From Chiloscyllium plagiosum (lineage: Eukaryota): a DNA stretch of 56,004 nucleotides. This document shows positions 17,102 to 55,290 of this stretch, piece after piece. How positions within the stretch are numbered: the first letter of the stretch is position 1; the number at the start of each line of letters is the position of its first letter. The notes under the pieces are model-generated. The model did not search any database and had not been told where the DNA came from. It saw only the letters and a program-made list of their open reading frames with translations. The stretch lies in the NCBI RefSeq assembly GCF_004010195.1, contig NC_057756.1:8562773-8618776 (forward strand). The letters are read 5' to 3'. Position numbers and translations under genes: made by a program.

Positions 17102-17690
17102 GTGGCTGTGCCTTCAGCTGCCTGGCTCGGAAGCTCTGCAATTCCTCACCTAAACCTCTTTGACCAAGTTTCTCTCCCTTCTTCTCCCTCTGTTATTCCA
17201 ATGTCTCTTTCTCTATACTACACAATGTACAAGGTGCTATTGAAAGGCAAGTTGTTGCTCACTCTCCTGCACTGTTTGAACCACACAGCCCATCCCTTAT
17301 CCTGGGTATTGGAGGGTTCAGTCACTGAGAATACCATCTCCTTTGTTTCTCTCAATATCCACATCTCTGTGCTCCCCGCCTTTCCCCACGTACAGCCCTC
17401 ACTGTGGGAGGAGGAACTACTGCAGGGCTCTCTCACTCTCTCCTCTGGCCCTCCCTCTGTCAGTCAGCACAGCTCCTGTGGAGTGCCCAGCTCTTGCCCA
17501 TTGCCTCCCCTATAAGCCTCCTCTTCTCTACACTCTGTGCTCCGTCACCGTGCAGCTCCTGTCGCCCATTTTCCAGCTGCATTGGAAAAGGATGATGACG
17601 GTTATTTAATTGTCCTGAACAGCCCCTTTACACTCGCGTCCAAAATGTTGGATTCTTCTAACCTGTACTCTGCTTGTTTCTCTCTTCTAG

Positions 17691-17865
17691 GAATTATGTT
17701 CGAAGCCAACACTCCAGCGATCGAAATGAAGCATCGAATAGTGTCTCTTTGAGAGAGGTGACCTGTTCAGGTGAAGCACAGAGCCTTGTACCAACAGCAC
17801 CTGAGCATCAGGATGGAGCAGCTGGAGAACAAAACCTTCTGGGGAACGGGGCTGTCCAGCACTGA
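17691..17865 (+). CDS. Cytoplasmic-tail exon of a paralog (gene A) of the IgV membrane gene; upstream exons not visible
   Basis: Acceptor TCTCTTCTAG, phase 2. NYVRSQHSSDRNEASNSVSLREVTCSGEAQSLVPTAPEHQDGAAGEQNLLGNGAVQH* is homologous to 38940-39099. Flanks 17102-19750 align to ~38315-39990. Confidence 0.65.
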
Positions 17866-18526
17866 CTGAGTTTCCATTGCACTGAGCCTGGTTCAGGGAT
17901 GGAGGAGTCAGCCCAGTGTTGAGGGGAATCGAGTGATTCCTGGCGGAAAGTCTGAGCTCAGGATTGGGATCAACAATCACTTCCCACTTTTCACAAACTC
18001 TCTTAGCAGTACCATCTCAGGAGGGAAACTCTCAGTGGGGGGGTGTTATCAATTTAGATTAGATTAGATTACATTAGATTAGATTACATTACAGTGTGGG
18101 GTGTTATCAATTTACAAGAACAACTCTCCAAATACTTCATCCTCTGTTTTGTATCTCAGCATTCCTGTTACAAACTGTGTCCAAACCCAGTCTCAGGTTT
18201 CATCTTGATGATTGTCACCCCATTGATCCTTCCCTGAGAGAGGTTTTTCCAAGATAATTTCCAAAATTATTTATTCTATTGATGAATGAGTGGAAACATC
18301 AGGTAGTTTCTGATAAATGTGTTTCCAGTGTGGGTGATACTGTCAGTGCCCCATTTATTGTCCATGTGGCCTTGACCCACTGCAGTCCTTGTAGTGATGG
18401 TGCTCCCACAGTGGGGAACATGGGAAGAGGCTTCAGAAACTCCCCCTGCAGCAGCACCTACTGGGCAAAGCCAGGAACTACATTATTGCCTACAGTATTG
18501 TAATGAAGGTGTTAATAGTGTATTGA

Positions 18527-18832
18527 TATTAGATTAGATTAGATTACATTACAGTGTAGAAACAGGCCCTTCGGCCCAACAAATCCACACCGACCCGCCG
18601 AAGCGAAACCCACCCATACCCCTACATTTACCCCTTACCTAACACTACGGGCAATTTTGCATGGCCAATTCACCTGACCCTGCACATCTTTGGATGGTGG
18701 GAGGAAACCGGAGCACCCGGAGGAAACCCACGCAGACACGGGGAGAACGTACAAACTCCACACAGTCAGTCGCCTGAGGCGGGAATTGAACCCGGGTCTC
18801 AGGCGCTGTGAGGCAGCAGTGCTAACCACTGT
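18527..18832 (-). mobile_element. HE1-type SINE, absent from the paralogous copy near 39650
   Basis: (TTAGA)n tail then body matching the other copies; CpG-rich, so young. Confidence 0.85.
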
Positions 18833-21800
18833 TACAGAAATATCCTGTAAGTTTATTTATGACTTCTGTGTATGAAGTAAGATTGGAAATATTTTATTTG
18901 TGGACATTTTGTATTTTTAGCCTGGATATTGCTTTTCTACCTGTACCTTTTGCTCCAAGCTGTGATTAAAGAGAAGCTGGTGTTGATACTAGTGTGCCTG
19001 CAGTCTGATGTTTATTACCATCATTATTACGAGCAACTGTTTTTGATGCAGGATTCAGATACTGGATGGTTTACAGATTGAAACTGCATCTGGACAAAAC
19101 TGTACTGATGTGTCTTCTGTCTAGTTAACTGTTAATTTTCTTCTAAATTTTTACAATTCTATTTTCAGCATTGTGTATACCAATACAAAAATATAACTCA
19201 TCAATAATTAATTCATACAGTTGTATTGTAAATGTTTTATAAATAAATCTGTCAGGTACAGTTAGATTTTCTATCAGCACTGTTTGTTCCAGGGTGCAAT
19301 TAAAGGGAAGCTGGTGTGTATGTACAGGATTCTGTGAATATTTTAGAGTTGGATTTATCTGTATTTGTATCCTGGATATTTATCCTGACATTGGACAGAT
19401 ATGTCTGTAAATTGAAATATGACTTTTGGAAATGTAGTATTTGCTCCAACAGTGGTTGGTCATAGTTTTCAATGGAAGGATACAACTTACTTTTCTATCT
19501 ATTGTTAGTTTTCTACCTGTAGTTTTTGCTCCAAGCTGTGGTTAAAGAGAAGCTGCTGCTGATATTAGTGGGTCTACCGTCTGATATAGAATGACTCTGC
19601 TGGTCACTGCATGAACAGAGGGGCTGGTATCTGCAGGCATTAAGTCCCTGATACAACTTGGAGTGAATGGAATTGGCTGAAGACTGGGATCAGTGATTGT
19701 GGGAATCTCAGGAAGAGGCTGGGGATGATCATCCAGTTGGTGTTCCTGGTGATTGGGAGTATAGGTGTTTGGGTGAGGGGGCATGGGGAGTTTGAGAGCT
19801 TCTGTTACCCCAAATACAACATTTAAGGAATATTTATCTTTTTCTGTATAAACTTAATGACATTACACCCCCAAACCACACATTCCCTGTGGTGGAGGCT
19901 GGTACAATTGCAACATTTAAGAGGCATTTGGATGGGTATATGAATAGGAAGGGTTTGGAGGGATATGGGCCAGGTGATGCCAGGTGGGACTAGATTGGGT
20001 TGGGATATCTGGTTGGCATAGACAAGTTAGACCAAAGGGTCTGTTTCCATGCTGTACATCTCTATGACCTCTTCCTCTGGGACATCAGTAATTGAATTGA
20101 TGTCATTTTCAGATTTCACCCTGGCCTGGACAATTTCTTCAACTTTGCTTCCAATGTCCCCTCTTCTCCCACCTTCATAGTCTTCCTGTTCACTCCTGGT
20201 TAGTAAACACTATGAGACCACATGGGATTGTGGGTAAGATACTGACAGAAATTGAAAATAGACAGACTGTCCATCTTTAGGTGGGAACTTACATTTTAAG
20301 AATGTATAGCATTGGGAGAAAGGTATTTGACCCCTGAAGCATGTTCCCCAGTCAATAATATCATGGCTAATCTTCCTCCACTCCACGTTCATGTCTGATT
20401 CCCATGTCCTGGAATTCCCAACAAGGCAAAAATCTCAACAATGAATCTACCAAAACGTCTCCTACAATCCGGATCAGTTCTGGTTCACTAATGTCCTTCA
20501 GAAAAGGAAACTACCATCCTTAGCCGGGCTGGCTGACATGTGACTCCAGACCCACAGCAATGTGGTTGACTCTTAACCTAGTCTGGGTAATTAGGGATGG
20601 GCAATAAATGCTGGCCTATTCAGCAACATCCTCATCCCAGAATGAATTTTTAAAAAATCATTGATGCAGTGCTAAGAGACTATATTAATGATATACATGT
20701 AATGTATATTAATGATATGTTAAATAATGCAGTGCTGAGAGACTGTATTAACACCCTACATTGTCTCCGCACTCCCAATGACGAAACCCATCGCAGGGAC
20801 AAGAGCCCTATAAGGCAGAGAGACACTCACAGTGCAGTGCTGAGGGAGTGCTGCAGTGTCAGAGGGGACATAGGGACAGATTGCTGCAATGTTAGATATT
20901 CTGTTGTTCGGCTGAGACATTGAACTGAAGCTTCATCTGAGAAAATAATCCCTTGGCCATGATCTGGAAGATTTTTGGGCAGTGATTTCACTGGAGACAG
21001 GATTTATTCCTAAATGAAATCAGGAATCAATGAAATGGATGATCTGCTTTCACCATGAACCAGATTTTGTGGGAGTGGGAGCGTGCTGTGCCGTATTTGT
21101 GGCAATACACACTTCAAAACATCTAATTTCACTGTTATCGGTGACAGGCAACTTTGGGATGTCCTATGGTCCTGAAAGACAATGTGGAAATGCAGGTCTT
21201 TGTTCAATTTACTCGAAGGTCTCCCTGAAATACCACTGTGTGCTCACCTGGTGGCGCTGTTACTATGGCTTGGCCATTTGGCGGTGGACAGCACCGCCAT
21301 CTACTGGTTTCAGTTACGTACTGACATAGCCCCATAACACACACTCCCCATGGCACAATCCATTAGACACACAGACACACACACATGTACTCCATAACAC
21401 ACAGACTGTAATGGACATAGTCTAATACAGACTGCAACAGATAGAAGGAACGTCCTGATTGGAATACCTGCCAATACTCAGAAGCATCTTGCTCCAGTGA
21501 AAGGCTTATAATGATGGCCGTGTCATGGGGGAACCGCTCTCCAACACAACGGGAAGAGGGACCCCATTGATACTGTCAAGCCAAAAGGATAATTGAAGCT
21601 GGGGGTGGGATGATGGCCCGGGGCTGGGAGGGATAGAGAGCTGTCAGAAACACACCCCTTTGTGGGTACACACCTCCAAGGGCTCCATGAGCAGGAGAAA
21701 GAGAGCCAGTGCTGAGGGATGTGCACTGGGTTAGGAGTGGTCACCTTTCCAATGCACTGACCAGAAGTGTGTGTGGGAGCTGGGGAAGCCTCGAACATTT

Positions 21801-22099: not shown

Positions 22100-22655
22100 A
22101 ATTGAGGAGGGAGGGGGTGTGGGGTGGGGGGTCAGCAGGAGCGTGTACCAGGGGCCAGGGGACCAGATGGACAGACACACCGAGGGGGTGTGGGGGGTCA
22201 GCAGGAGCGTGTGCCAGGGGCCAGGGGACCAGATGGACAGANNNNNNNNNNNNNNNNNNNNNNNNNNNNNNNNNNNNNNNNNNNNNNNNNNNNNNNNNNN
22301 NNNNNNNNNNNNNNNNNNNNNNNNNNNNNNNNNNNNNNNNNNNNNNNNNNNNNNNNNNNNNNNNNNNNNNNNNNNNNNNNNNNNNNNNNNNNNNNNNNNN
22401 NNNNNNNNNNNNNNNNNNNNNNNNNNNNNNNNNNNNNNNNNNNNNNNNNNNNNNNNNNNNNNNNNNNNNNNNNNNNNNNNNNNNNNNNNNNNNNNNNNGA
22501 CACACCGAGAGGGTGTGGGGGGGTCAGCAGGAGCGTGTACCAGGGGCCAGGGGACCAGATGGACAGACACACTGAGGGGGTGTGGGGTTAGCAGGAGCAT
22601 GTACCAGGGGCCAGAGGACCAGATGGACGGACACACTGAGGGAGTGTGGGGGGAG
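22100..22655. repeat. G-rich ~68-bp tandem repeat spanning a gap (22242-22498)
   Basis: GGGGGGTCAGCAGGAGCGTGTACCAGGGGCCAGGGGACCAGATGGACAGACACACCGAG copies on both sides of the Ns. Confidence 0.85.
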
Positions 22656-23551
22656 CAGCTTCATTGAGCAGCTGTGTCCATGCTCTCAGTCTGGGTGGCA
22701 GCCCCACTGGGATCGAGCCTGGGAGCGGTGGAGGGGGCAACAAGAGAAAGGGGAGTGCAGGGGGAGGGGGAGGGGGCCCAGAACTGCCGGCTGGACTAAA
22801 CCTGCACATTGCTGGTAACCCCGAATCCCTGGGGTTGGGAAGGTCGAAGGGCGATGAGAGAGAGTCACCGTGGGCCAGGGGCCAGGAAATGGCTGGAGAG
22901 AGAAGGAGAAGCCCCACACAGGGCTGAGGGACATGGAAAGGAGACAGGCCCTTTAGGTGGGGAGCCGACGACTCAATATCTAAACTTCATGGGGAGAAGG
23001 GAAAACGCTAATGGAGAGCTTGAAGGGAAATAAAAGGTGGGATCTCCCAGACTCACCAGAGGAGGGAAAGATCTAGTGGGAAGCAGAAACAGAAACTGGG
23101 GCAGGAGTCAGGGAAAGGTTTGGAGAAATCATCTTGGAAATATCAGAGTTTTTTGGAATGCTCAGAAGAGGAAAGTATGTGTGTGTGTTCAGAAACTGCA
23201 GGATTATTCCAGAGAGGGAGGGAGAAAGGACAGGCAGGATGATATAAAAATGTAGAAGAGGGCACATTGTGCTGGGATATGAAGGGCTGGGGAAAAGGAG
23301 GCAGCTGTAACTGATAGAGAGCTCTTTCCTCCTGCACCCTCACTTTTGGTTCAATATCCCCTCAACCACCAGCATTTAAATCAAACAGAGAATCTGATCA
23401 TTATGACAGTGCTACGTGTGGGAGCTTACCGTGTGCAAATTAATCACCATAATTCTGATATTACAACAGTTCCTTCACTGACAGGGAAGCATTTTGGGAT
23501 ATGGTACAGAGGTGAAAGGTGCTGTATAATGTAAACCCTTCCTGAAACTGA

Positions 23552-24450
23552 GTCATAGAGTCATAGAGATGTACAACACAGAAACAGACACTTCAGTCCA
23601 ACCCGTCCATGCCGACCAGATATCCCAACCCAATCTAGTCCCACCTGCCAGCATCTAGCCCATATCCCTCCAAACCCTTCCTATTCATATACCCATCCAG
23701 ATGCCTTTTAAATGTTGCAATTGTACCAGCCTCCGCCATATCCTCTGGCAGCTCATTCCATACACGTACCACCCTTAGCTCAAACCCTCCAACCCTGGCA
23801 ACATTCTTGTAAATTTTTTTCTGAACCCTTTCAAGTTTCACAACATCTTTCCGATAGGAAGACCAGAATTGCACGCAGTGTCCTAACCAATGTCCTGTAC
23901 AGCCGCAATATCACCTCCCAACCCCTGTACTCAATACTCTGACCAATAAAGGAAAGCATACCAAATGCCTTCTTCACTATCCTATCTACCTGCGACTCCA
24001 CTTTCAAGGAGCTATGAAACTGCACTCCAAGGTCTCTTTGTTCAGCAACACTCCTGAGGATTTTACCATTAAGTGTATAAGTCCTGCTAAGATTTGCTTT
24101 CCCAAAATGCAGCACTTCACATTTATCTAAATTAAACTCCACCTGCCACTTCTCAGCCCATTGGCCCATCTGGTCAAGATCCTGTTGTAATCTGAGGTAA
24201 CGTTCGCTGTCCACTACACCTCCAATTTTGGTGTCATCTACAAACTTACTAACTACACCTCTTATGCTCACATCAAAATCATTTATATAAATGACGAAAA
24301 GTAGTGGACCTTGCACCGATGCTTGACCCAGGACTCCACTGGTCACAGGCCTCCAGACTGAAAAACAACCCTCCAACACCACCCTCTGTCTTCTACCTTT
24401 GAGCCAGCTCTGTATCCAACTGGCGAGTTCTCCCTCTATTCCGTGAGAAT
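23552..24450 (-). mobile_element. 5'-truncated CR1 LINE (RT C-terminal half and 3' UTR)
   Basis: QGPLLFVIYIND...SKFVDDTKIGG...WQVEFNLDKCEVLHFG; (CTATGACT)n-type tail. Confidence 0.85.
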
Positions 24451-24475
24451 AATATAAAAGAAAGTGTTCACACCA

Positions 24476-25019
24476 TCAAAGTTCTGCAATGTTGCTGCAT
24501 TCAGCCTTTAATGGTGGGGAACCATTCAACATCGAGTGGGCGGTGACTCCATGTCCATCCGTATCCTCAATGATGGGGAAACCTTTATTTGCTCAAAGAG
24601 AAGGTGAGAGAGAGAGGAGAAGAGAGCACCCATTGGTGATCATCTTCCCACATTTCTATTCATCCTGCAATGGGTCTTGCAGATTGGAAGCTTGAAGATG
24701 CTCCCTGCTTCTTTATGAAACAGTGCAGCACCCAATGGGGAAACCTGCCATTCTTCCCTAGTCTTGTCTATATGTGACTCCAGTCACACATTAACCTGGT
24801 GGACATTTATAACTGCCCCTTGAAATGTCACGTCATGTCAAGCAGTTTGCAATCAAGCCCCCAGACAGGAAAATTATCATTCCCACAAGCTTGTGCAGAA
24901 GTTCACTCTTGGGTGTCCTCTAGATAACCAGTACATCAAAAACTGGGACATTCCTTTGTAGGTACAGGGCAGCACCACTTGCTCCCCAAAGAACCCAGTA
25001 ACTGGGACAGGCGAGTCAC
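24476..25019 (-). pseudogene. Inverted pseudogene (B) of the IgV gene family: partial V exon plus terminal-exon copy
   Basis: From 25019 downward: acceptor CTTTTCCAG|GTGACTCG, GDSPVPVTGFFGEQVVLPCTYKG, then a frameshift and the conserved Trp TGG>TAG. 24476-24588 copies the exon at 43185-43297 with acceptor AG>AA. Intron flank 25020-25270 matches 30110-30352. Confidence 0.8.
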
Positions 25020-25489
25020 CTGGAAAAGATTGAAAGTATTTATCCCTGCTGGTACATTACGTCCCAAGCTTCACATGGTTACACTGCGATGCTGGATTTA
25101 CAAGAAGCTCTGATCAGTAACTCACTGCTTTCATTTCTGGGGGAAGGTTAAAGCTCAGACATTGAGGGTCTTCATCTAAAAGCAGCTTGTGCTGGATATT
25201 TGTCAGCACTGAGCAGCTGGACAGCACTTTGAATCACATGGTTTCCATTTGGACACACAATGGAAGAACACAGCTGGATACTGGTTACTACCCTCAGGAC
25301 CAGGGTGGGGGTTGGGGGCACAGCTAGAAGAGGTACAATATTGGCTGATGTCAAAGTGTTTTGAACAGGTTGTGATGGACGAGTGCATTGTGCAGGGATG
25401 GTCTGAAAGGGGCCAAGGGAATGTGGATCCGCACATCCCTCCACCACTGAACTGTCTGATCATACTCCTCCTCCCAATACACTCAGACT

Positions 25490-26590
25490 CTGCCTCCTCC
25501 CAGGACCCAAAGCCAAATGTCCTTCACCTCCTAAGGAAGTAGAGGCATTGTTGAGCTTTCAACACATCAACATGGGTGGATCCAGGGCAGATTGTGGGTG
25601 ATCAACACTGCCAGGAACTTAATGCTCTTGAACGTCTCCACCTCAGCTCCATTGATCCATGCCCTCCAATCTGCTTCCTGAAGTCAATGACCAAAACTAT
25701 TGTTTTCCTGGTGGTGATGAAGAGATTGTTGTCTTTACACTATGCTGCTAAGCACTCTATCTCTTCCCTGTACTCCATATCATCACTGTTTGAAATCTCA
25801 CCCACAATATTGCTGTTGTCAGCGAATTTGTGAATGGAGTTGGGGTGGAATTTGGCCACCGAGTTGTGAGTGTATAAGGGGAACAGTAGGGGGCTGAGGA
25901 AGCAGCCTTGTCAGGCACTGATGTTGGGTATTATGGTGGGGAATACTGATACCTATCCTCACTGATTGCAGTCTGTGGGTCATCACATCAAGGATCCAGT
26001 TACATAGGGGAGAGTGGAGACCTAGGTCTTAGAGTTTAGAGATTAATTTGTTTGGAATTCTGGTGTTGAAGGTGGAACTGAGGTCAATAAGTATCCTTGT
26101 TATCCAGAAATTCCGGGGTTGGAGTGCAGGAGCAGGGAAGTGGACTTATTGCATTGGTACTGCTGAAAATGTGTTGCTGGAAAAGCGCAGCAGGTCAGGC
26201 AGCATCCAAGGAGCAGGAGAATCGACGTTTCGGGCATGAGCCCTGCTCCTTGGATGCTGCCAGACCTGCTGCTCTTTTCCAGCAACACATTTTCAGCTCT
26301 GATCTCCAGCATCTGCAGCCCTCACTTTCTCCTTATTGCATTGGTAGGTGAATTGCAAAGGATTCAGCCAATTTGACAGGCCAAACTTCTCATGCTAATG
26401 GGGATCACTGTGGTAGTCATTGAGGCACGTTGCATGCAGTTGTTTGGTACCGAGATGATGGTGGTTTTCTTGAAGCAGGTGGGGACTTCAGACCGGAGCA
26501 AGGAGAGGTTAAAGATCTCAGCAATCCTCCCGCCAGCTGGTACGCACAGGATCCGCATGCACGGCCGGAGACACTGTCTGATGCAATCGG
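25490..26590 (-). mobile_element. Degenerate non-LTR RT fragments (Rex1/Babar-like), with a Penelope-type inverted remnant at 26160-26300
   Basis: Translation IFNLSLLRSEVPTCFKKTTIISVP; inverted arms at 26162-26218 and 26240-26298. Confidence 0.55.
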
Positions 26591-26639
26591 AGTCCTACAT
26601 GATGCCATGAGGGAAGTCACTCCCTTTCCGCTCATCTAT

Positions 26640-27480
26640 GCTGCTCAGGAGTTTTGTGTTTGAACTTTTAACCTGTGACGGAACGGCCCTAAAAGGACAT
26701 CACCCCACGCTGTATCAGAGGAAGGATGCGGGCTCTGGGCTCTCCCATTCTCATAGCGAGGGGGGGGGGGAGGGAGGGAAGGTGTGAGGGATCCGGGTGC
26801 AGCCTCTGTCGGGAAAAGCCGGGCCAAAGCTGCTCTCCCCTGAAGGGATTGCAATGAGACAATGATCCGAATGGGGACTGCCGGAAAACTGTGGGTCCAG
26901 AACCGGGAGAGCAGAGAGGAAAAAGGGGCATGAATTGGTGCACCCCTGTCTCCCCACAATGTAGGTCAGTCTGCAGTTTGTAACTTGTTTTTATGAATGA
27001 GCCAAATGACCGGGAGTGAACCCAGGGTTAGCTCTGGGCTGTATCTGACTGAGACACGATCCGCTCTCCCTCCAACATCGAGTTTTACCAAATGTTTCTC
27101 AGCAGCTTCTCGGTCTCCTGTCAGTGTCTGACCCTGATCCTGATCGCAGTCCCGGTCCCGGTCCCGGTCCCGGGAAAGGAGCTGCAGGTACTTACTGTCA
27201 GTGTCTCCCACCCGGGGACACCGAGGGAGGGAGGGAGGGGGATCTGGGGAAACTTTCTGAGCAGTGAATCACCTCTTTATTAAAAGGAAACGCTGACAAT
27301 CTCAGACACAGACAGAAAGGGCTGGGACTTCTCAGAAGTTTATAAAGTGATGTGTGAGTGAACTGAGGGAGAGCGGAAGGTTTGGGATTGAAATGGTTAA
27401 ACTGTAGGGGATCATTGTCAGAGGGCGGCCCCTGTCCGTCATCGCCCGGGGACAGGGCGGGATAATCAACCTGATCAGGA
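26640..27480 (+). promoter_or_regulatory. CpG-enriched promoter / exon 1 region of IgV gene C
   Basis: Local CpG enrichment around the first exon. Weak NF-kB-like motifs GGGAAAAGCC (26811), GGGGAAACTTTC (~27247), GGGACTTCTC (~27325). Confidence 0.45.
27092..27187 (+). CDS. Gene C exon 1 (N-terminal leader)
   Basis: ATG at 27092; MFLSSFSVSCQCLTLILIAVPVPVPVPGKELQ; donor CAG|GTACTT; phase 0 matches exon 2. Kozak context is weak. Confidence 0.55.
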
Positions 27481-27524
27481 AGGGAATCTGTTGGAAAGGG
27501 ACTGACTGTGTTTTCTTGTTGCAG

Positions 27525-27597
27525 GGACACAGCTCCCAGAAACTACTCCCCCCGCTGCTGCTGCTGCTGCTGCTAAATGTTGTTGCTGCTGTTTCAG
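27525..27597 (+). CDS. Gene C exon 2 (signal peptide)
   Basis: Acceptor TTTTCTTGTTGCAG; GHSSQKLLPPLLLLLLLNVVAAVS; donor CAG|GTCAGT; phase 1. Confidence 0.8.
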
Positions 27598-27704
27598 GTC
27601 AGTGCTGGGACATTTCAGCAGTGATCAAAGGCTTGAAGGGGAGGGTGTGGAGGAGAATCAGGAATCCCTCTTGCTTTAAGTTGCAAGTGGACCCATTCAG
27701 GCAA

Positions 27705-28670
27705 AAGTCAAAATGTGTGGCGCTGGAAAAGCACAGCCGGTCAGGTAGCCCGCGAGGAACAGGAGAGGTAATGTTTCGGACATAAGCCCTTCATCAGGAA
27801 TGTGCAGTGGTATGGGGCTGAGAGATGAATAGGGGGCTGGGGCTCAGGGGAAGGAAGGTGGGAAGGCGATAGGTGAATGCGGGTGGTGGGTAACTGTGAT
27901 AGGTCGGTGGGGAGGATGGAGTGGATAGGTGGGAAGGAACATGGACAGGTAGGACAGGCGGTGCTGAGTTAGAGGGTTGGATCTGGGATGAGGTGGCTGG
28001 AGGGGACTTTTGGAAAGCAGTGAAGTCGATGTTGATTCCGTGTGCTTGAAGGGTCCCAAGGTGGAAGTTGGGTGTTCTTGTTCGAGTTGGTGGGTGGCGT
28101 TGACTTGGTAGTGGAGGAGGCCCAGGGTTTGTATGTCCTTGGGGGAATGGGAGGGGTAGTTGAAGTGGTTGGCCACAGGGTGGTGGGGTTGTTTGGTGCA
28201 TGAGTCCCAGCGATGTTCCCTGAACTGCTCCTCATGTTTGCGTCCTGTCTCCCCAGTGTAGAGGAGACCACATCGAGTGCAGTGGACACAGTAGATGAGG
28301 TGGGTGGATGCACAGGAAATTCTCTGCTGGAGGTGGAAGGATCCTTTGGGGCCTTGGGTGGAGGTGAGGGGGGGGTGTGGTGTGGGCACAGGTTTTATAC
28401 CTTGTGTGGTGGCAGGGGAAGGTGGAGGGTGGGTTGGTTGACAGTGTGGATCCAACCACAATAAGGATAGAACCACCCTGCTCCTCACCTTCCCTCACAC
28501 CCTCACTAATCTCCAGAAATAGCATATGCAATTTCTGCCACCTACAGTCACAGCCCATCACCAAGGACATATTTCCCTCTCCACCCCGATCCGTGTTCCA
28601 CAGAGATCATTCCCTCCGCAATTCCCTCATTAGGTCCATGTGCCCCCCACCCCCAACAACCTCCCAAAGT
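27705..28670 (-). mobile_element. Penelope-like retroelement 3' fragment (GIY-YIG endonuclease + pLTR with hammerhead core)
   Basis: CASTHLIYCVHCTRCGLLYTGETGRKHEEQFREH...PVANHFN (PLE GIY-YIG). The - strand has CTGATGA-A-GGGC-TTAT-GTCC-GAAA at 27774-27797. Confidence 0.8.
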
Positions 28671-29356
28671 TACTGAAGATTTGGTTGGGAGATGTGGGGT
28701 AACTCTCCACACGGTGTCGGGTTGAGGGTTCTGCAGGTTCTGGGTAAATCATTCACCCTGTTCTGTTTTCTCTGGTCAGTGTCCTCAGGGTAGTACCCAT
28801 TCCTTGTGGGATGAGTCTTCCTTCTCTCTGGGGTTGGGGAGGGGGGAGAGAGAGAGATGCTCCCCTGATGTTCCAATCTTGTGGAGCTGCGTATCTCCTG
28901 TTTCTTCTTTCCTTTCCCCCATAGTTTGACACTGTTACCTTTCTGACGCTGCCCCAGTTTATACTGATTTCTCACTAATCGACTTACACACTGAATACAA
29001 ATGCAAACTGCCTTGATTGGTCTCACGTACAGAAAGCTTTGTTTAAATGTGTATTGTTTCACTGTCTTTCATGGAACTGGTATTGTGGGGTAATGGGAAG
29101 TCTTGATTTTAAATGTTATACAGTGCATGAACTGCCTTCCTTTGGACTCTGATATATTTTCTCTAATCTCAAATGATAGTACACATCTCTGGAGCAGATG
29201 GAATTTGAACCTGGTCCTTCTGGCTCAGTGGCAGGGACACTACCACTGCACGATAAGCTCCCTCCAATAGGCTCTGACCTCTCCTTGATGATATCAAACC
29301 AGTGGATATCACTGTCTTTCCCCAGCCAATTTTCAGTCAGTGATGAGGTGATTTAG

Positions 29357-29700
29357 GGCAGCACGATGGTTCAGTGGTTTGCACTGCTGTCTCTCAGCGC
29401 CAGGGACCCAGATTTGATTCCAGCCTCCAGCGACTGTCTGTGTGGAGTTTGCACATTCTCCTCGTGTCTGCGTGGGTTTCCTCCGAATGCTCTGGTTTCC
29501 TCTCACAATCCATAGATGTGCAGGTTAGGGTGAATTGGCCATGCTAAATTGTCCATAGTGTTTAGGGCAGCGTAGGTTAGGTGTATTAGTCAGGGGTAAA
29601 CATAGGATAGGGGAATGGGTCTGTGTGGGTTACTCTTTGGAGAATCGGTGTGGACATGTTGGGTCAAAGGGTTTGTTTCCACACTGTAGGGATTCCATGA
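29357..29700 (+). mobile_element. HE1-type SINE
   Basis: Head, core and tail match the other copies. Confidence 0.8.
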
Positions 29701-30352
29701 GGTGATCTGGGTGGAGGTGATTTTTAGTTGAGTATTTGAAACACTTCGTCCTTTCTGCTCTTGGGGCAAGAAGCTAGCCTTGTTTTAAACAGGGCCCCTC
29801 TTCCCGAAACCGGAGAGCCATTCAGGGATTGGGCTTTGGGTTCTGAGGTGAGGCTGAATCAGGCTGTTTTGGGAGGTGGGTAGGAGCAAGATCTGATGGG
29901 TGAGTGGTGGAGGGAGGTGAGGATTCACATTGCCTCATCCCTTGCCTAGTGTATTCATCTGTCACTGTCCTCCCAACCCTGTCCAAAACACATCCTCAGG
30001 TACCCCTCCCAACACCCATTCCTGATTTACCTTTTGAGAGTCAGTTCACGTGTGAGCTCCATCTCGCATTGTGTACCCTCCGACCATCAGCCCCCATCCA
30101 GCCCATATCCCAGTGTGTGTCCAAATGGGAACCATGTGATTCAAAGTGCTGTCCAGTGCTCAGTGCTGACAAATGTCCAGCACAAGCTGCTTTTAGTTGA
30201 AGACCCTCAATGTCTGAGCTTTAACCTTCCCCCAGAAATGAAAGCAGAGCTTCTTGTAAATCCAGTATTGCAGTGTAACCATGTGAAGCTTGGGATGTAA
30301 TGTACCAGCAGGGAGGGTCTACCTATGGATAAATACTTTCAATCTTTTCCAG

Positions 30353-30697
30353 GTGACACGCCTGTCCCAGTTTCTGGGTTCCTTGGGGAGCAGGTTGTGC
30401 TGCCCTGTACCTACAAAGGGAATGGCTCAGTCTCTGATTTATGGGTAATCTGGAGGACACCCAAGATGGAAACTTTATATGAGTTTCTCGATGGGAGTGA
30501 TGATTTGGCCCAACAAGATCCACGGTTCAGAAACAGAACAAACCTGTTCAAAGATCAACTGGAACAAGGCAACTGGTCAGTTCTGATCTCTGACCTCAGG
30601 GAGACAGACCAGGATGAGTATCAGTGTTACATTCACAAGAGAGTCAGTGTGCACCATTTTTTGGAGCAGCGTGATCGTGTCTATCTGTCTGTAAGAG
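30353..30697 (+). CDS. Gene C exon 3: Ig V-set domain, B7/butyrophilin (ICOSL/CD276/HHLA2-like)
   Basis: VVLPCTY, VIWR, QDPRFRNRTNLFKDQLEQGNWSVLISDLRETDQDEYQC. Canonical phase 1/1 splice sites CCAG|GT and AG|GTGAGA. Confidence 0.92.
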
Positions 30698-33895: not shown

Positions 33896-33899
33896 TAGT

Positions 33900-36370: not shown

Positions 36371-36439
36371 TTCATTCAACCCAAGGCCAAAGTGAAACCC
36401 CTGAAGCAGGTCATGGTGAGCGACTCAATACAACTGAAG
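36371..36439 (+). CDS. Gene C exon 4 (stalk); alternative donors after 36415 and 36439
   Basis: Acceptor TGTTTTCCAG; (V)HSTQGQSETPEAGHGERLNTTE; donors ATG|GTGAGC and AAG|GTAACC, both phase 1. Confidence 0.7.
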
Positions 36440-37353: not shown

Positions 37354-37456
37354 GTCCTGGACTCGCCACTGGAGCAAGAGTTGGATTGGGAATTGGGATT
37401 GCTGCTGGGATTGGTGCTGGAATTGTGGGTTACATTGTCCTCAAGCGACAAAGAAG
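37354..37456 (+). CDS. Gene C exon 5 (transmembrane)
   Basis: Acceptor TTCTGTCTCTAG; PGLATGARVGLGIGIAAGIGAGIVGYIVLKRQR; donor AAG|GTGAGT; phase 1/2. Confidence 0.85.
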
Positions 37457-38939: not shown

Positions 38940-39099
38940 GAAACAAAATCTACACAAGATGGCAGCATCAAATGGTGACCCTATGAGAGAGATGACCTGT
39001 TCAGGTGAAGCACGGAGCCTTGTACCAACAGCACCTGAGCATCAGGATGGAGCGGCAGGAGAACGAAACCTTCTGGGGAATGGGGCTGTCCAGCACTGA
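38940..39099 (+). CDS. Gene C exon 6 (cytoplasmic tail)
   Basis: Acceptor TCTGTCTCCACAG; phase 2 fits exon 5; KQNLHKMAASNGDPMREMTCSGEARSLVPTAPEHQDGAAGERNLLGNGAVQH*. Possible internal donor after 39004. Confidence 0.75.
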
Positions 39100-43297: not shown

Positions 43298-46104
43298 TGG
43301 TGTGAACACTTTATTTTGCATTGACTCCATTTCAGGAAGGGTTTACATTTATACAACACGTTTCAGGTCTGTATGACATCCAGAAATGCTTCCCTCTCAG
43401 TGAAGGGACTGTTGTAATCTCCGAATGATGGTGGTTAATTTGTGCACAGTAAGCTCCCACACGTAGCACTGTCATAATGATCAGATTCTCTGTTTGATTT
43501 TAAATGCTGGTGGTTGAGGGGGATATTGACCCAAAAGTGAGGATGTAGGAGGAAAGAGTTCTTTATCAGTTACAGGATAGGACAGCATGGAAGGAGGCTG
43601 TTTGGCCCTTCATATTTTGGCTGGCCCCCCTCTTCTCAAATCATTTTAACCATTTACACCTCAATCAGACCACCCAGTAATCTTTTACAGCGAGGAGAGG
43701 ATCTTGTGGTACAGTGGTAGTGTCCCTATCTCTGAGTCAGATGACTTAGGTTCAAGCAATCCCCCTGCCCTGAGATGTATAATACCATCTCTGAATGGTG
43801 TGAGTCAAGAACAGGTCTTACAGAGAGAGTGTCAAAGCTGAGACTGTGCAGCCTGTCCTCCTGATGTTACCCTTTTCACTTTGCTCTCATTCTGGTTAAT
43901 TCACAGTGTGCCCTCTCCCTCATAAATCCTTCCTGGGGTGCAGTGCCCACAATTGAACACTGTGACTCCAGGTCAGTGTGGTGGGGAGGGGTGTGTTTAA
44001 CCAACTCGAAGCCCCTCTGAGCCAGCATTACATTGCTGAGCAATTTGACAGAGTCACTCCCTGTTCCATCCTTTACAGAGGCTGCTCTCACTTTTTCACA
44101 TGGACAGTGGCTAGGGGTGGGATTGAGGGGGGGGGGTCACATTTCAACATCTCACAGACTCAGGGAGTCGGACAGGATGTTTCAGAAAGATCAGGTTTGA
44201 GATAACAGGAAACAGGAATTTCAGAAATAAAACAATTCCAGACTGGATGCAGGAACAATGTTTCACCTTGGCCAGGGCTCCAGAGCAAGGGGTCACAGCC
44301 TCAGGATACGGGAGAGGCCATTTCAGACTGAGCTGAGGAGAAATGTCTTCACTCAGAGGACAGTGAACCTGTGGGATTCTCTCCCACAGAAAGCTGTGGA
44401 GGGGAAATCACTGAATATGTTTCAGAAAACCCAGATACATTCCTTGAGGCTGAAGGTGTTGAGGGTTATGCGGAGAGAGTGGGAGTACAGTGTCATAGAG
44501 GATTGTGCCTCATGAAAAGCCGAGCCTGGTTTTACTAGTAAGACCTAACCTTTCCCTGATCCCCTGAAACACTTGCAGCTGGAATAAAGATTGGTGAATC
44601 TTAACTTTGACCCAGCAAATTCCTGCAGCCCCTATGAGGTTTCAAAATGTCTGGTTGTATTGGATATGACCTCCCGCTGAGGTGATGTTTATTCCCACCT
44701 GCTCCAGGTGATCATGGAAACATGTTCCACTCCAAATACAAACCTCCCGTCTGTGTATCTGTTCATTCACTTTCCTTCTCATTTCTGCATTTCGATAGTG
44801 CTGCACATTCTGTGACCTGCCTTAACCTCGCTTTTACAATCATTGGGTGGGATTAAACAATGTTTAGGGTCATTGGTTTGTTGAAAGTGTACATTTAGCA
44901 AGATGACAGCTGAGTAAGATGCTCCAGCCAGTGCTTTTCTGCTTGCCAGTTCTCTTTGTTTCTTCTCTCTCTCTGCTGCAGTTTGTCTTCATCCCACATC
45001 CCAACTTTTAACTTGTTAAACCATCCTACCTGGAGGGAATGGAGAACGGAGTCTGAGACCAGCCTGGCTCGACAGACGAGTCACAGCTGGAGTGGGAGTG
45101 CGGATAGAGCCCAGAGCGGGGAGTAGAGACACAGACAGAGCCCGGAACAGGAGTAGAGGCACAGACAGAGCCTGGAGTGGGGAGCAGAGCTGCACTGGAG
45201 CCTGAAGCGGGAAGCAGGAGCAGGAGTAGACAAAGCCCAGGCCAGCTGGGGGGGGATGAGTCCGGGACAGAAACCAGTGCGTGGAGGCAGTTTGGACTCA
45301 TATTCTGAAACCTGGTGGGCATGGACCCAGTGAAAAAAGAAGAATGACTTGAGTACTTTATAGATACTTTTTATTCTCATTCTGGTATTTTAAACTCTGT
45401 ATTCCCATGCTTGTCTATTTGTATTTATTACTATTTGAATTCTGTAACAACATTTAAAGTACCTGTACCTAGGTACCCTGGGTTTTGGAAAGGCTGCTTG
45501 GGAGGGGCTGTGGGTCCCACCTCCTGCAGCCCAACCTCTGGAGACAGAAGGACCATGTTTCTGGGGAGGAAGTGCAGGTTCTCACACCGTTAACCCCTTC
45601 CATTACCCAGTTTGGTAGCTCCAGCCTTCAGGGCTCAGCCAGCTCGCTCAGTGTGGTTTATTACTGAGTGACCTTTGGGGATGGACAGGGAAGACCCACT
45701 CAGTTAACACTGTGTCTGTGTGACCCTCAGTGCTTCCTCCAAGTGGGGGTGAACATTGTGGGGTATCCATTGATCAGCTGAGGGAGAGCAGTAGGTGAGA
45801 ATCAGTAGAAGGTTTCCAAGCCCATGTCTGACCTGAGTCTGACAGATTTCACGGGCTCAGAGTCAATGTTGAGGAGTCCCAAGGTTGTTCCCACATGATT
45901 GCATACCATTGTACTGCCATTTCTGGTGGGTCTATGTGACCAGTGTGTTATGAAATGGAGGTCAACACTCCTCTACTGATTAAACCCGAAACACCCACAG
46001 TAGTTCACCTCACCTGGTAATTTGATAAAAGTAGTATGATGAGGAGAGTAACCTACCTCTTACCCCAATTTGTTATAAAGGAGTAATTAAATAAAATGGA
46101 CTCC

Positions 46105-46460
46105 CTGATACTCACTTCATACTCATCCTGGTCTGTCTCCTTGAGGTCAGAAATCAGATCTGACCAGTTGCCTTGTTCCAGTTGATCTTTGCTGAAAATG
46201 TGTTGCTGGAAAAGCGCAGCAGGTCAGGCAGCATCCAGGGAACAGGAGAATCGACATTTCGGGCATCAGGTTTGTTCTGTTTGCAAACCTTGGGTCTTGT
46301 TCTGTCAAATAATCACTCTCATTGATGAATGTCTGAACATTTCATGCTCTGATATCCCCCAAATTACCAATAAATCAGAGACTGGTACATTCTCTTTGTA
46401 GATACAATGCAGTACAGCCTGCTCCCCAAGGACCCCCAAAACTGGTACATGGGAGTGACA
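46105..46460 (-). pseudogene. Inverted V-exon pseudogene (D) of the IgV family
   Basis: Reverse complement is homologous to 30353-30630 (QDPRFANRTNL, KDQLEQGNWS, ETDQDEY). Acceptor lost (CCAG>TCTG). ~75-bp Penelope-type insertion at 46191-46266. Flank 46460-46700 matches 30110-30350. Confidence 0.8.
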
Positions 46461-46809
46461 CAGAAAAGATTGAAAGTATTCATTTACAGATAGACCCTCC
46501 CTGCTGGTACATTACATCCCAAGCTTCACATGGTTACATTGCGATGCTGGATTTACAAAAAGCTCTGATCAGTAACTCACTGCTTTCATTTCTGTGGGAA
46601 AGTTAAAGCTCAGACATTGAGGGTCTTCAACTAAAAAGCATTTTGTGCTAGATATCTGTAAACACAGAGCAGCTAGACAGCATTTTGTATCACATGTTTT
46701 CTAATGTACACATGATGGGAGAACATGTTGGGATAGCTGTCAGACCCCTTTGGGAGAAACATATGCAGTCTAGTCCCTGTATTTTAAAATAAAGTATACT
46801 TGATAGAAT

Positions 46810-51349: not shown

Positions 51350-51775
51350 GTCCCAAGGATGAGGTTACTGGGAAAGGGAGGGGTGTCGGCACTGGAGGAG
51401 GTTACAGAAGTAGGAAGGGGAATTGGGGCTGGAGGATGTTACTGAGAGAGGGAGGGGTGTCAGTGCTGGAGGAGGTTACAGATAGAGAAGGGTTTGGGAC
51501 TGGAGGGGGTTGCAGAAATAGGATGGATGTAGTGGTTGAAGAAGGTTGCAGAGATAGGGAGTGGTGAATGGACTGGAGGATGTTACAGAGATAAGGAGGG
51601 ATGTAGGGTTTGCAGGAGGTTAGAGAGATAGGGACGGGTGTAGGGTTCAGAGGAGGTTACAGAGATAGGGAGGGATGTAAGTGCTGGAGGGAGTTACAGA
51701 GTTAGGGTGTGGTATGGAGGCTGCAGGAGGTTGTAGAGATAGGGAGATGTGTAGGGGCTGGAGGGGGTTACAAGT
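51350..51775. repeat. G-rich tandem repeat (GGAGGAGGTTACAGAGATAGGGAGGGG...)
   Basis: About 11 degenerate copies. Confidence 0.8.
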
Positions 51776-51804
51776 GTGGGAAGAGGTATATGTCATTCAC
51801 TTAC

Positions 51805-51925
51805 TTGTCTCTTCTCTTTCTGGCCTTGACAATGAAGTAAATCAGAAGTGGTGAGGTGATGAGCAGAACAGCGCCTCCTGCAGCTACCAGTCCGTATTTC
51901 TGTATCAGTTCCCATCTCATTCCCA
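51805..51925 (-). CDS. Gene E transmembrane exon (type I membrane protein)
   Basis: Acceptor CCTTCACAATCAG; GMRWELIQKYGLVAAGGAVLLITSPLLIYFIVKARKRRD; strong donor AA|GTAAGT; phase 1/2. Confidence 0.75.
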
Positions 51926-53645: not shown

Positions 53646-53779
53646 TCCTGGAACATCCAGCCTTGAGCTCCTTGGCCATGATAGGGAAGCAGAACAGGGA
53701 GAGGCCGCTGACACAGCAGAAAGCATCAAGGATGCGTGCATTGCTTTAGCCTCTCAGGAAGTCCTAAAGTGTGGTGCAT

Positions 53780-54882
53780 TCTCATCACTGACCTCTGACA
53801 GCATGGCATTCCTTCAGCACTGACCGTCCAACAGTTCCGCACACCCTCAGTACTGACCCTTCTATAGTGTTGCACTCCCTTAGTACTGACCCTCCTACAC
53901 TGCAGTGCTCCCTCTGATGGTGCGGCGCTGACCCTCCGACAGTGCAGCGCTCCCTTAGTGCTGGCCCTTCTACAGTGCGGCACTCCCTCAGCACTGACCC
54001 TCCTTCACTGCAGTGCTCCCTCAGCACTGACCCTCCAACAGTGCAGCACACCTTCAATATTGACCCTTCTACAGTGCTGCACTCCCTCAGTACTGACCCT
54101 CCTACACTGCAGTGCTCCCTCAGCACTGACCCTCCGACAGTGCAGAGCTCCCTTAGCACTGACCCGCCAACAGTGAGGCACTCCCTCAGCGCTGACATTC
54201 CGATAGTGAGGCACTCCCTCAGCGCTGACATTCCGATAGTGAGGCACTCCCGCAGCGCTGACATTCCGACAGTGAGGCACTCCCTCGGCGCTGACCCTCC
54301 GACAGTGCAGCACTCCCTCAGTACTGACCCTTCTACAGTGTTGCACTCCCTCAGTACTGATCCTCCTACACTGCAGTGCTCCGTCAGCACTGACCCTCTG
54401 ACAGTGCAGCACTCCCTCAGCACCGGCACTCCCTCAGCACTGATCCTCTGACAGTGCAGCACTTCCTCAGCACTGACCCTCCTACACTGCAGCGCTTCCT
54501 CAGCACTGACCCTTCAACAGTGCAGCACACCCTCAGTACTGACCCTTCTACGGTGCGGCACTCCCTCAGTACTGACCCTCCGACACTGCAGTGCTCCATC
54601 AGCACTGACCCTCCGACAGTGCAGCACACCTCAGCGCTGACCCTTCGGCAGTGCGGTGCAACCTCAGCACTGACCCTCCGACAGTGCGGAGCTCCCTTAG
54701 CACTGACCCTCTGACAGTGAGACACTCCCTTGGCACTGACCCTCCGACAGTGCAGAGCTCCCTCAGCACTGAACCTCTGACAGTGAGGCACTCCCTCAGT
54801 TCTGGCCCTCCGGTGGTGCGGAGCTCCCTCGGCGCTGGCCCTCCGACAGTGCGGCGCTCCCTCAGCACTGACCCTCCGACAA
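53780..54882. repeat. Minisatellite, 33-bp unit (CAGCACTGACCCTCCGACAGTGCAGCACTCCCT)
   Basis: About 33 copies; explains the repetitive ORFs in all frames. Confidence 0.92.
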
Positions 54883-55275
54883 CAGGAGAGAAGCACTGAA
54901 AATAGTGATTATTATTCACAATTGATATGATAGGTGGTCATATCCTGGTTGTATAATGTCAAATTTATACTTTTGCAACAGGCCCCACAGTTTTCTTCTT
55001 TAGAGCTATAAAATGAAATGGAGTCTAGTTTTGTATAATTGAAACACCAGGAGAGTTTCATAACTTGAAAGTCATGTTCTGCTTATTGATTTAGCTCAGC
55101 AGTCCAGTGTTGCTATTTGAAGTGATGAGAGTTTAAGTTTGAGATTGCACAGTGAGGTAAACAAATTCTGCCTGACAACAGCTGACTGATAGGTTGTGTT
55201 CTAAGTGCCATGGCGATTGAGAGGAACATGCAGTGCCTGCAACTGGAAAGCACCCATCTATCCGACTTTCTTTAC

Positions 55276-55290
55276 CTCTTGCAGAGATAA
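55276..55290 (-). CDS. Candidate 15-nt stalk micro-exon of gene E
   Basis: TTTTGCAG|TTATCTCTGCAAGAG|GTAAAG; phase 1/1. Confidence 0.35.

What the first reader, a model, noticed from the sequence alone, without database searches (positions are those of the whole stretch)
17102..55290. Birth-and-death cluster of single-IgV B7/butyrophilin-like receptor genes next to an IRG GTPase in a shark
Seen: at least four related loci within ~30 kb, namely the gene A 3' end (+), pseudogene B (-), complete gene C (+) and pseudogene D (-). The TM and tail exons of a fifth type I membrane gene E (-) share the 1/2 TM-exon phase. Known: B7/BTN-family V domains carry the RT.LF...GN.SL...D.G.Y.C signature and are immune co-signalling molecules; most have V+C domains. 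Inference: this is a lineage-specific, rapidly turning-over family of V-only co-signalling ligands or receptors in a cartilaginous fish, adjacent to an innate-immunity GTPase gene. It may be undescribed.
Basis: partly seen in the sequence, partly recalled or inferred. Interest (0 to 1): 0.8.

Follow-up and report, generated by a model that had tools for sequence, protein, structure and literature searches.

The report
Shark single-V B7-like gene cluster
This bamboo-shark region holds one working, expressed gene for a membrane protein with a single B7-type antibody-like domain, plus three broken or cut-off copies; it belongs to a large gene family seen so far only in sharks, whose function is untested.

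Summary

- **Gene C (+, 27092-39099)** is an intact six-exon gene of 281 codons. Each exon is 100% identical to RefSeq protein P0181, "CD86-like", of Chiloscyllium plagiosum.
- **Expression:** contigs of three runs join the V exon directly to the stalk exon (30697>36371, GT..AG). A DNA-like run lacks this joint. So the gene is spliced and has no IgC exon.
- **Other copies:** A is an intact tail-exon copy cut off by a 500-N gap. B and D are broken V-exon relics. Copies differ by 14-27% in DNA, so they are not haplotype artefacts.
- **E** is a lone TM-like ORF with no similarity to the family.
- **Gap 22242-22498** lies inside an intergenic 64-bp minisatellite.
- **V domain type:** B7, with human B7-H4 the best single-domain match.
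- **Family:** every named close relative is a shark protein, from 12 species, under inconsistent automatic names.
- **Conservation pattern:** the loop regions vary, while the last 23 tail residues are 86% conserved.

The scan noted a related V-linker-V gene 168 kb away (unchecked). Function is untested. Four paper searches found no description of the family.

The parts
4134..4817 (+). IRG/IIGP-type GTPase ORF (227 aa), G domain only; context, outside the finding
   Evidence: Pfam PF05049 IIGP E 2.9e-40, profile 23-214 of 375. No ORF downstream continues it.
16602..17101 (.). Assembly gap (500 N) that cuts off gene A upstream of its 3' block
   Evidence: N run. A/C homology starts at 17114, right after the gap.
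17114..19749 (+). Gene A 3' block, colinear with the 3' end of gene C (38316-39986)
   Evidence: Four colinear blastn blocks at 73-80% identity.
17691..17865 (+). Gene A tail exon: acceptor AG, open frame and TGA stop all kept
   Evidence: Sequence. 84% aa identity to the C tail and 91% to Hemiscyllium P0226/P0183. DNA alignment.
22108..22658 (.). Intergenic ~64-nt minisatellite holding the assembly gap 22242-22498
   Evidence: TRF array 22499-22658. Two further units at 22108-22239 on the left flank.
24907..25263 (-). Pseudogene B: 5' fragment of a V exon (about 25019-24907) plus upstream intron; frameshifted and truncated
   Evidence: 85.8% identical to C 30110-30466. 1-nt deletion and loss of homology after about column 400. 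tblastn.
27092..27187 (+). Gene C exon 1 (ATG, 32 codons, ends in phase 0)
   Evidence: Sequence. 100% to P0181 residues 1-32.
27525..27597 (+). Gene C exon 2: hydrophobic signal-peptide core, ends in phase 1
   Evidence: Sequence. 100% to P0181 residues 33-56.
30353..30697 (+). Gene C exon 3: IgV domain, phase 1-1
   Evidence: Pfam V-set 1.9e-9. 100% to P0181 residues 58-171. Spliced to exon 4 in three runs.
36371..36439 (+). Gene C exon 4: 23-codon stalk with an NTT site, phase 1-1
   Evidence: Sequence. Joint 30697>36371 in X1, X2 and X3. 100% to P0181 residues 173-194.
37354..37456 (+). Gene C exon 5: glycine-rich transmembrane segment, phase 1-2; the only copy in the window
   Evidence: Sequence. 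tblastn finds one copy. 100% to P0181 residues 196-228. Helix 211-235 in the model.
38940..39099 (+). Gene C exon 6: cytoplasmic tail and TGA stop
   Evidence: Sequence. 100% to P0181 residues 230-281.
46077..46725 (-). Pseudogene D: V-exon relic (about 46463-46077) plus upstream intron
   Evidence: 79.6% identical to C. Acceptor lost, 73-nt insertion, stops.
51805..51925 (-). 'Gene E' TM-like ORF segment with AG/GT borders in phase 1/2; unsupported as a gene and unrelated to the family
   Evidence: Sequence and translation. Best blastp E 0.40 against 236 stored proteins. No Pfam hit.

Best explanation
The region is a piece of a multigene cluster, seen so far only in sharks, of B7-type V-domain membrane proteins in Chiloscyllium plagiosum. 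Gene C is intact and spliced. It encodes a long leader with a signal peptide, one IgV domain closest to the B7-H4 and PD-L1 V domains, a 23-residue glycosylated stalk, a glycine-rich transmembrane helix, and a 58-residue tail without tyrosine. Shown here: the gene structure, the direct V-to-stalk splice, the B7-type fold, the multi-copy and order-specific expansion of the family, and the decay of copies B and D. Inferred: the protein sits in the plasma membrane with the V domain outside. The variable C-C' and F-G regions of that domain would form a binding surface that differs between paralogs. The near-invariant last 23 tail residues (TAPEHQDGAAGE.NLLGNGAVQH) would dock one common cytosolic partner. 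That would make the family a set of diversified recognition or co-signalling molecules rather than one conserved ligand. Turnover is by local duplication, inversion and decay among retroelement debris.
For: All six exons are 100% identical to P0181, a 281-aa RefSeq model. The joint 30697>36371 (GT..AG) appears in one contig in each of three runs with 0 mismatches, and is absent from run X16, whose contig reads through the exon/intron border. V-domain type: phmmer gives VTCN1 60 bits, MOG 44.6, BTN1A1 37.6, PD-L1 35 and CD276 29.6 per domain. The family profile gives VTCN1 66.8 and PD-L1 about 52. The AF2 V domain has pLDDT about 90, and Foldseek hits PD-L1, B7-H4 and CD86 IgV with TM (target) 0.75-0.90. 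Family: 65 hits, 64 of them named shark proteins, and 66 hits, 65 of them named shark proteins, from 12 species. There are 72 distinct shark V domains. Heterodontus forms one clade of 12 (95/89), and gene C sits in a clade of four (100/98). Mean pairwise identity is 30% in the F-G region, 36% in C-C', 76% in D-E-F and 86% in the last 23 tail residues. Copies differ by 14-27% in DNA. B and D are broken. Retroelement fragments lie next to and inside the genes.
Against: No functional data exist. The runs are only guessed to be RNA, their organism and tissue are coded, and I saw one joint only; the other four rest on identity to the RefSeq model. The tail has no known signalling motif and no Pfam hit. 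Closeness to B7-H4 is a similarity ranking, not a phylogeny with canonical B7 genes, which I could not bring in. 'Seen only in sharks' rests on word-index searches and on 30 of 150 representative hits looked up. In the careful tree two long-branch teleost V domains fall among the shark rows. Loop variability alone does not show positive selection. Whether A is a whole gene is unknown.
Confidence: 0.72

Rival explanations
1. Gene C is simply the 1:1 ortholog of a known single-copy B7 gene (CD86 as RefSeq names it, or VTCN1 or CD276) that lost its IgC exon, and the other pieces are unrelated debris.
For: RefSeq calls it 'T-lymphocyte activation antigen CD86-like'. B7-H4 is the best single-domain PDB match.
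Against: Identity to human B7-H4 IgV is only 31%. Each shark has several paralogs on one scaffold, under nine or more different automatic names. C. plagiosum alone contributes 5 distinct V domains, which fall in different subclades. A, B and D are clear paralogous copies.
Confidence: 0.05
2. The extra copies are assembly artefacts, that is, uncollapsed haplotypes or misjoins around the two gaps.
For: Two N gaps lie in the region, and gene A begins exactly at a gap.
Against: Copies are 73-86% identical in DNA, far below allelic identity. They lie in different orientations and carry different lesions. The A tail is nearer to Hemiscyllium paralogs (91%) than to the C tail (84%). An independent DNA-like run covers C with 0-1 differences per contig.
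Confidence: 0.02
3. The family is not immune at all. It would be a set of V-only adhesion or channel-auxiliary membrane proteins of the sodium-channel beta-subunit / myelin P0 kind.
For: The architecture is the same (signal, one V, TM, short tail). RefSeq names several members 'sodium channel subunit beta-4-like'. The family profile hits SCN4B at 2.1e-10 over V plus TM.
Against: The V domain scores higher with B7-H4 (66.8 bits) and PD-L1 (about 52) than with SCN4B (43.8 over a longer stretch). The top listed Foldseek hits, to rank 50, are all B7-family IgV domains. Order-specific expansions, pseudogenes and variable loops are not what conserved single-copy channel subunits show.
Confidence: 0.1

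Closest known systems
B7-H4 / VTCN1 (B7 family co-inhibitory ligand)
   Same: It is the best single-domain sequence match to the IgV (60 bits, E 1.7e-15; 66.8 bits with the family profile; 31% identity and TM 0.82). The motif region FR.RT..F.DQ...GN.S.......TD...Y.CYI is shared in the alignment.
   Different: B7-H4 has IgV plus IgC and is single-copy in mammals (recalled). Here V is spliced straight to a stalk. The family has many copies per species, some V-V, and a conserved tail of its own.
PD-L1, CD86 and CD276 IgV domains (B7 family)
   Same: Same V-domain fold. Foldseek E about 2e-11 for PD-L1; CD86 gives TM 0.90 at rmsd 1.4 A. Profile hits are about 52 bits for PD-L1 and 36 for single V-C CD276.
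   Different: No IgC2 domain. Identity is 23-24%. No evidence for a CD28-family partner.
MOG and butyrophilins (BTN/BTNL)
   Same: B7-related V domain. MOG is also V-only with a TM segment. RefSeq labels many members 'MOG-like' or 'butyrophilin-like'. PDB scores are MOG 44.6 and BTN1A1 37.6 bits.
   Different: No IgC and no B30.2/SPRY: V-set is the only Pfam family that clears its cutoff on P0181. The tail is hydrophilic with no second hydrophobic segment. It scores lower than B7-H4.
Teleost multi-V 'CD276 homolog / BTNL2 / VTCN1-like / hemicentin-like' proteins
   Same: They are the nearest relatives outside sharks in the all-against-all HMMER search. They are built from repeated V domains of this type.
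   Different: At most 39% identical, often 3-15 V domains long, and they lack the shark tail. 17 of the 17 looked up are teleosts.
Germline multigene V-type receptor families (teleost NITR, mammalian NKp30/KIR-like systems; recalled, not tested)
   Same: Birth-and-death clusters with pseudogenes, variable loops at the tip of a V domain, and short tails.
   Different: Those V domains are of the antigen-receptor (VJ) type or of C2 type and carry ITIM/ITAM logic. Here the V domain is B7-type and the tail has no tyrosine.

Membership tests
B7 family (CD80/CD86/PD-L1/B7-H3/B7-H4) | N-terminal IgV domain of B7 type | tested here: met
   In the phmmer run the five strongest distinct molecules are B7/BTN-related, and in the profile run the top three are B7 ligands. 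Foldseek top hits are PD-L1, B7-H4 and CD86 IgV. Pfam V-set.
B7 family (CD80/CD86/PD-L1/B7-H3/B7-H4) | Membrane-proximal IgC domain (V-C ectodomain) | tested here: not met
   The V exon is joined directly to a 23-codon stalk exon in three runs. P0181 has only V-set above its Pfam cutoff. Relatives have V-stalk-TM or V-V.
B7 family (CD80/CD86/PD-L1/B7-H3/B7-H4) | Type I membrane protein with a short cytoplasmic tail | tested here: met
   Signal-peptide exon, TM exon and 58-residue tail. Predicted helix 211-235.
B7 family (CD80/CD86/PD-L1/B7-H3/B7-H4) | Binds a CD28-family or other lymphocyte receptor | not testable with these tools
   Needs binding assays.
Butyrophilin / BTNL | IgV-IgC ectodomain plus cytoplasmic B30.2 (PRY/SPRY) | tested here: not met
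   No IgC exon. No SPRY/PRY hit on P0181 or on the tail exons.
VTCN1 (B7-H4) orthologue | Single-copy gene, V-C, orthologous placement and synteny | tested here: inconclusive
   Multi-copy and V-only argue against it.
MOG | Single V, TM, then a second membrane-associated hydrophobic segment | tested here: not met
   Single V and TM are met. The tail KQNLHK...GAVQH is hydrophilic throughout.
IRG / IIGP GTPases (for the ORF at 4134-4817) | G domain followed by the C-terminal helical domain (Pfam profile 1-375) | tested here: not met
   Only profile positions 23-214 are matched. No continuing ORF downstream.

The most novel reading that the evidence does not exclude
The family is a shark invention: a germline-encoded, non-rearranging repertoire of B7-type single-V (and V-V) surface receptors. 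The C-C' and F-G regions of the V domain have diversified by birth-and-death evolution. All members signal or traffic through one invariant 23-residue cytoplasmic peptide of a kind not yet described. On this reading it is a candidate for the innate, NK-type or gamma-delta-T-cell-facing recognition system that has not been identified in cartilaginous fish.
Probability: 0.2. Interest if true: 0.75.

Novelty: new variant of a known kind. Interest (0 to 1): 0.5.

Why it matters
Sharks are the oldest living lineage with antibody- and T-cell-based immunity, yet their germline receptor and co-signalling families are poorly charted. This is a B7-type family that has dropped the constant domain and expanded separately in several shark orders. 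It varies mainly in two V-domain regions, C-C' and F-G, and keeps one invariant tail peptide. Automatic annotation hides the family under at least nine unrelated names. Recognising it as one family gives comparative immunologists a defined set of genes to test for ligands, cell types and a possible new tail-binding partner. It also corrects misleading labels such as 'CD86-like' or 'sodium channel subunit beta-4-like'.

Tried and rejected

A tree with canonical CD276, VTCN1, HHLA2, ICOSLG, BTN and MOG could not be built. I used PDB similarity rankings instead.

I looked for further family pieces with tblastn of 226 stored proteins against the window.
- Apart from A, B, C and D, the only hits were retroelement-derived parts of chimeric gene models. 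One example is 25522-25841, an RT fragment matched by the N-terminus of P0123.
- The C-terminal exon of P0062 also matched, downstream of the A and C tails.

A, B and D have no detectable leader or TM exons in the window.

Gene E:
- no similarity to the 236 stored proteins;
- no Pfam hit. My first Pfam try (fifth query) was in the wrong frame, as one search shows, and says nothing;
- no tail exon stood out among the ORFs.

The ESM Atlas gave no look-alike for the tail.

Shark monophyly against teleost V domains was not settled. The quick tree gave 85. The careful tree placed two long-branch teleost rows beside Pristiophorus. The AU test did not reject shark monophyly (p 0.51).

Tree rows dropped: 2 short domains, 20 duplicate sequences and, through a naming slip in my script, all but one V domain of each of the 7 teleost proteins.

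Papers:
- Searches gave listings only.
- I read passages of PMC12227049, PMC12841164, PMC12151841 and PMC11599192. None describes this family.
- PMC3709836 (Flajnik 2012, B7 evolution) is not held.
- I did not ask for supplements. Those of PMC11599192 and PMC12841164 may list shark B7/BTN genes and could bear on the novelty claim.
Full report
**What is in the window.** The window has two N runs, 16602-17101 (500 N) and 22242-22498 (257 N).

A tblastn search with the translated V exon finds three V loci:
- C at 30346-30696 (+), 100% identical;
- D at 46454-46095 (-), E 3.9e-18, with in-frame stops;
- B at 25026-24925 (-), E 3.9e-12, covering only the first 34 residues.

A blastn comparison of the window against itself shows how the copies relate:
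- 17114-18050 matches 38316-39281 at 80.1%, with three further colinear blocks up to 19749/39986 at 73-79%. This is gene A against the 3' end of C.
- B against C: 85.8% over 373 columns, inverted.
- B against D: 81.2%.
- C against D: 79.6%.

These values are far from allelic identity. The copies also lie in different orientations, so haplotype duplication does not explain them.

**The gap named in the finding.** TRF finds a 64-nt array at 22499-22658. A fuzzy search finds two more units at 22108-22239 on the other flank, in the same orientation. The gap therefore lies inside an intergenic minisatellite between A and B. No exon is near it and no reading frame crosses it. True continuity cannot be shown. 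I did this test, not first.

The other gap (16602-17101) matters more, because homology of A to C begins 13 nt after it.

**Gene C.** The splice sites were read directly from the sequence.

| Exon | Coordinates | Content | Phase |
|---|---|---|---|
| 1 | 27092-27187 | ATG, 32 codons | ends in 0 |
| 2 | 27525-27597 | signal-peptide core | ends in 1 |
| 3 | 30353-30697 | IgV | 1-1 |
| 4 | 36371-36439 | stalk with NTT site | 1-1 |
| 5 | 37354-37456 | transmembrane | 1-2 |
| 6 | 38940-39099 | tail, TGA stop | |

The exons add up to 846 nt, or 281 codons. tblastn of 11 shark relatives maps onto exons 1-4 and 6; exon 5 drew only an out-of-frame hit there and is placed.

Compared exon by exon, all six are 100% identical to stored protein P0181 at residues 1-32, 33-56, 58-171, 173-194, 196-228 and 230-281. 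RefSeq names P0181 [quoted passage not shown]. So the window matches the whitespotted bamboo shark, and the gene is already modelled there.

Whole-protein steps used P0181.

**Expression.** The V exon's 31-mers are held by 18 runs. None of them is on record as RNA. I laid 30450-36449 against X1, X2, X3 and X16.
- In each of X1-X3 (three samples, one study) one contig joins 30695>36369 with "cut +2". That is 30697>36371 with GT..AG ends and 0 mismatches.
- The X1 contig runs on for a further 206 letters beyond the stalk exon.
- X16 lacks the joint (0 contigs). One of its contigs reads through the exon/intron border (30587-31011).
- Unique intron bins 35250-35449 and 36050-36249 have depth 0 to 1.1 in X1-X3.

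This is a spliced transcript in which V is followed directly by the stalk, so there is no IgC exon.

Limits: the RNA label of these runs is a guess, the organism and tissue are coded, and I saw only this one joint.

**Copies A, B, D and E.**
- **A.** The tail exon 17691-17865 keeps its acceptor, open frame and TGA. The distal coding part is much better conserved against C than the flanks are. Its peptide is 91% identical to Hemiscyllium P0226 and P0183 but only 84% to the C tail. A and C therefore separated before those genera did. No V, stalk or TM copy for A exists in the window.
- **B.** It keeps about 240 nt of intron and about 113 nt of V exon, has a 1-nt deletion, and then loses all homology.
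- **D.** It has lost the acceptor AG, carries a 73-nt insertion and has stops.
- **E.** The segment 51925-51805 (-) reads GMRWELIQKYGLVAAGGAVLLITSPLLIYFIVKARKRRD between AG and GT in phase 1/2. Its best match to 236 stored proteins has E = 0.40. It has no Pfam hit (the try was out of frame, as one search shows). It abuts a tandem repeat at 51357-51772. I count it as unsupported.

Retroelement pieces lie next to B (RT, 23831-24382), inside C intron 3 (LINE endonuclease, 33847-34551) and between C and D (RNase H, 41553-41868).

**What kind of V domain.** The V exon hits Pfam V-set at E 1.9e-9.

| PDB target | phmmer, gene C V exon | family profile, 32 full-length rows |
|---|---|---|
| VTCN1 / B7-H4 | 60.3 bits, E 1.7e-15 | 66.8 bits |
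| PD-L1 | about 35 bits | about 52 bits |
| SCN4B | not among the best listed hits | 43.8 bits, over V plus TM |
| MOG | 44.6 bits | 37 bits |
| CD276 | 29.6 bits per domain | 36 bits for single V-C |
| BTN1A1 | 37.6 bits | 34 bits |

AlphaFold2 on P0181 with that alignment gives a V domain with pLDDT mostly 77-95, and a TM helix at 211-235. Foldseek against the PDB returns PD-L1 IgV (E about 2e-11), B7-H4 IgV (31% identity, TM 0.82) and CD86 IgV (TM 0.90, rmsd 1.4 A).

**The family.** HMMER against 1.84 billion representatives gave 2692 hits at E <= 1e-3. Of the 150 listed, 13 are 56-79% identical. All 13 are shark proteins. The 17 lower-identity hits that I looked up (27-39%) are all teleost, mostly multi-V proteins. 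The other 120 were not looked up.

Two word-index searches gave the following.
- 65 hits among 722 candidates.
- 66 hits among 77 candidates.
- Every named hit is a shark protein, plus one unnamed eukprot entry.
- The species are Chiloscyllium plagiosum and C. punctatum, Hemiscyllium, Stegostoma, Rhincodon, Heterodontus, Carcharodon, Cetorhinus, Mustelus, Scyliorhinus canicula and S. torazame, and Pristiophorus.
- No batoid or chimaera appears.
- For most species every listed hit lies on a single large scaffold.
- The names range over CD276 homolog, BTNL2, BTN1A1-like, MOG-like, SCN4B-like, ICOS-ligand-like, CD86-like, JAML, MXRA8-like, VTCN1-like and 'uncharacterized'.

**Tree.** I used 72 distinct shark V domains and 7 teleost ones, with 114 columns.
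- Gene C sits in a clade of four with C. punctatum P0221 (89% identity) and P0182, and Hemiscyllium P0183 (support 100/98).
- The 12 Heterodontus domains form one clade (95/89) and the 4 Mustelus domains another (98/78).
- The five C. plagiosum domains fall in different subclades that are shared with other orectolobiforms.
- This is the birth-and-death pattern: old paralog lines within an order and separate expansions between orders.
- In the careful tree two long-branch teleost rows sit beside Pristiophorus. The AU test does not reject shark monophyly (p 0.51).

**Variation pattern.** Column entropy over the 72 shark V domains is highest at residues 34-42 (C-C') and 86-108 (end of F, F-G, start of G). 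In the 32-protein alignment the mean pairwise identities are as follows.

| Region | Mean pairwise identity |
|---|---|
| F-G region | 30% |
| C-C' | 36% |
| Whole V domain | 64% |
| D-E-F | 76% |
| Transmembrane | 44% |
| Last 23 tail residues (27 rows, five orders) | 86% |

The tail has no tyrosine and no Pfam match, and it found no Atlas look-alike.

**Reading.**
- Shown: an intact, spliced, V-only B7-type membrane-protein gene with decayed paralogs, inside a family that all named hits place in sharks only.
- Inferred: a surface molecule whose variable V tip binds differing partners and whose invariant tail engages one cytosolic partner.
- Open: whether it acts as ligand or receptor, and in which cells.

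**Known or new.** The gene models exist in RefSeq. Four full-text searches and passages of four papers gave no description of this family. The 2012 B7-evolution paper is not held, and I did not see any supplements.

Scan notes agree on the six-exon gene (s1-883920) and on the G-domain-only IRG (s1-883984). They also report a V-linker-V gene 168 kb further on (s1-883655, unchecked).

Noticed in passing
window 4134-4817 (+): The IIGP/IRG-type ORF stops after the G domain (Pfam profile 23-214 of 375). No ORF downstream continues the helical domain. It is either a truncated relic or a G-domain-only IRG.
   Followed up: partly
P0224 (Hemiscyllium) residues ~55-155 and P0014 (Rhincodon) residues ~50-150: Two family members carry a different ~100-residue cysteine-containing ectodomain module. 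It replaces the V domain in P0224 and precedes it in P0014, with the same leader, TM and tail. It has no Pfam hit. This suggests exon shuffling within the cluster.
   Followed up: partly
P0017 (Cetorhinus maximus, 584 aa): This RefSeq model is named 'PRDM7-like'. It fuses a family V-stalk-TM part to a long C-terminal part that I did not analyse. It is probably a read-through model.
   Followed up: no
window 18345-18482 and 39443-39604 (+): The C-terminal 46-54 residues of C. punctatum model P0062/P0227 match a stretch about 0.35-0.5 kb downstream of the A tail exon (91%) and of the C tail exon (65%). This is either an alternative last exon or a mis-modelled 3' UTR.
   Followed up: no
window 15139-16277, 36684-37025, 51357-51772, 53781-54881: Four minisatellite arrays, some with long ORFs on both strands. 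The first lies about 0.3 kb upstream of gap 16602-17101, the second lies in gene C intron 4 just before the TM exon, and the third abuts the 'gene E' segment.
   Followed up: partly
window 30110-30352 vs 25020-25263 vs 46464-46725: The ~240 nt of intron upstream of the V exon are conserved among B, C and D as well as, or better than, the exon itself. C carries a 15-nt deletion there. All three copies begin to align at about the same point, as if the duplication unit had a fixed 5' border.
   Followed up: partly
one search hits P0002, P0005, P0009-P0012 and others: Teleosts hold very long proteins with 5-15 V domains of this B7-like type. They are annotated as hemicentin-like, BTNL2 or uncharacterized. 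This looks like a separate poly-V expansion in bony fish.
   Followed up: partly
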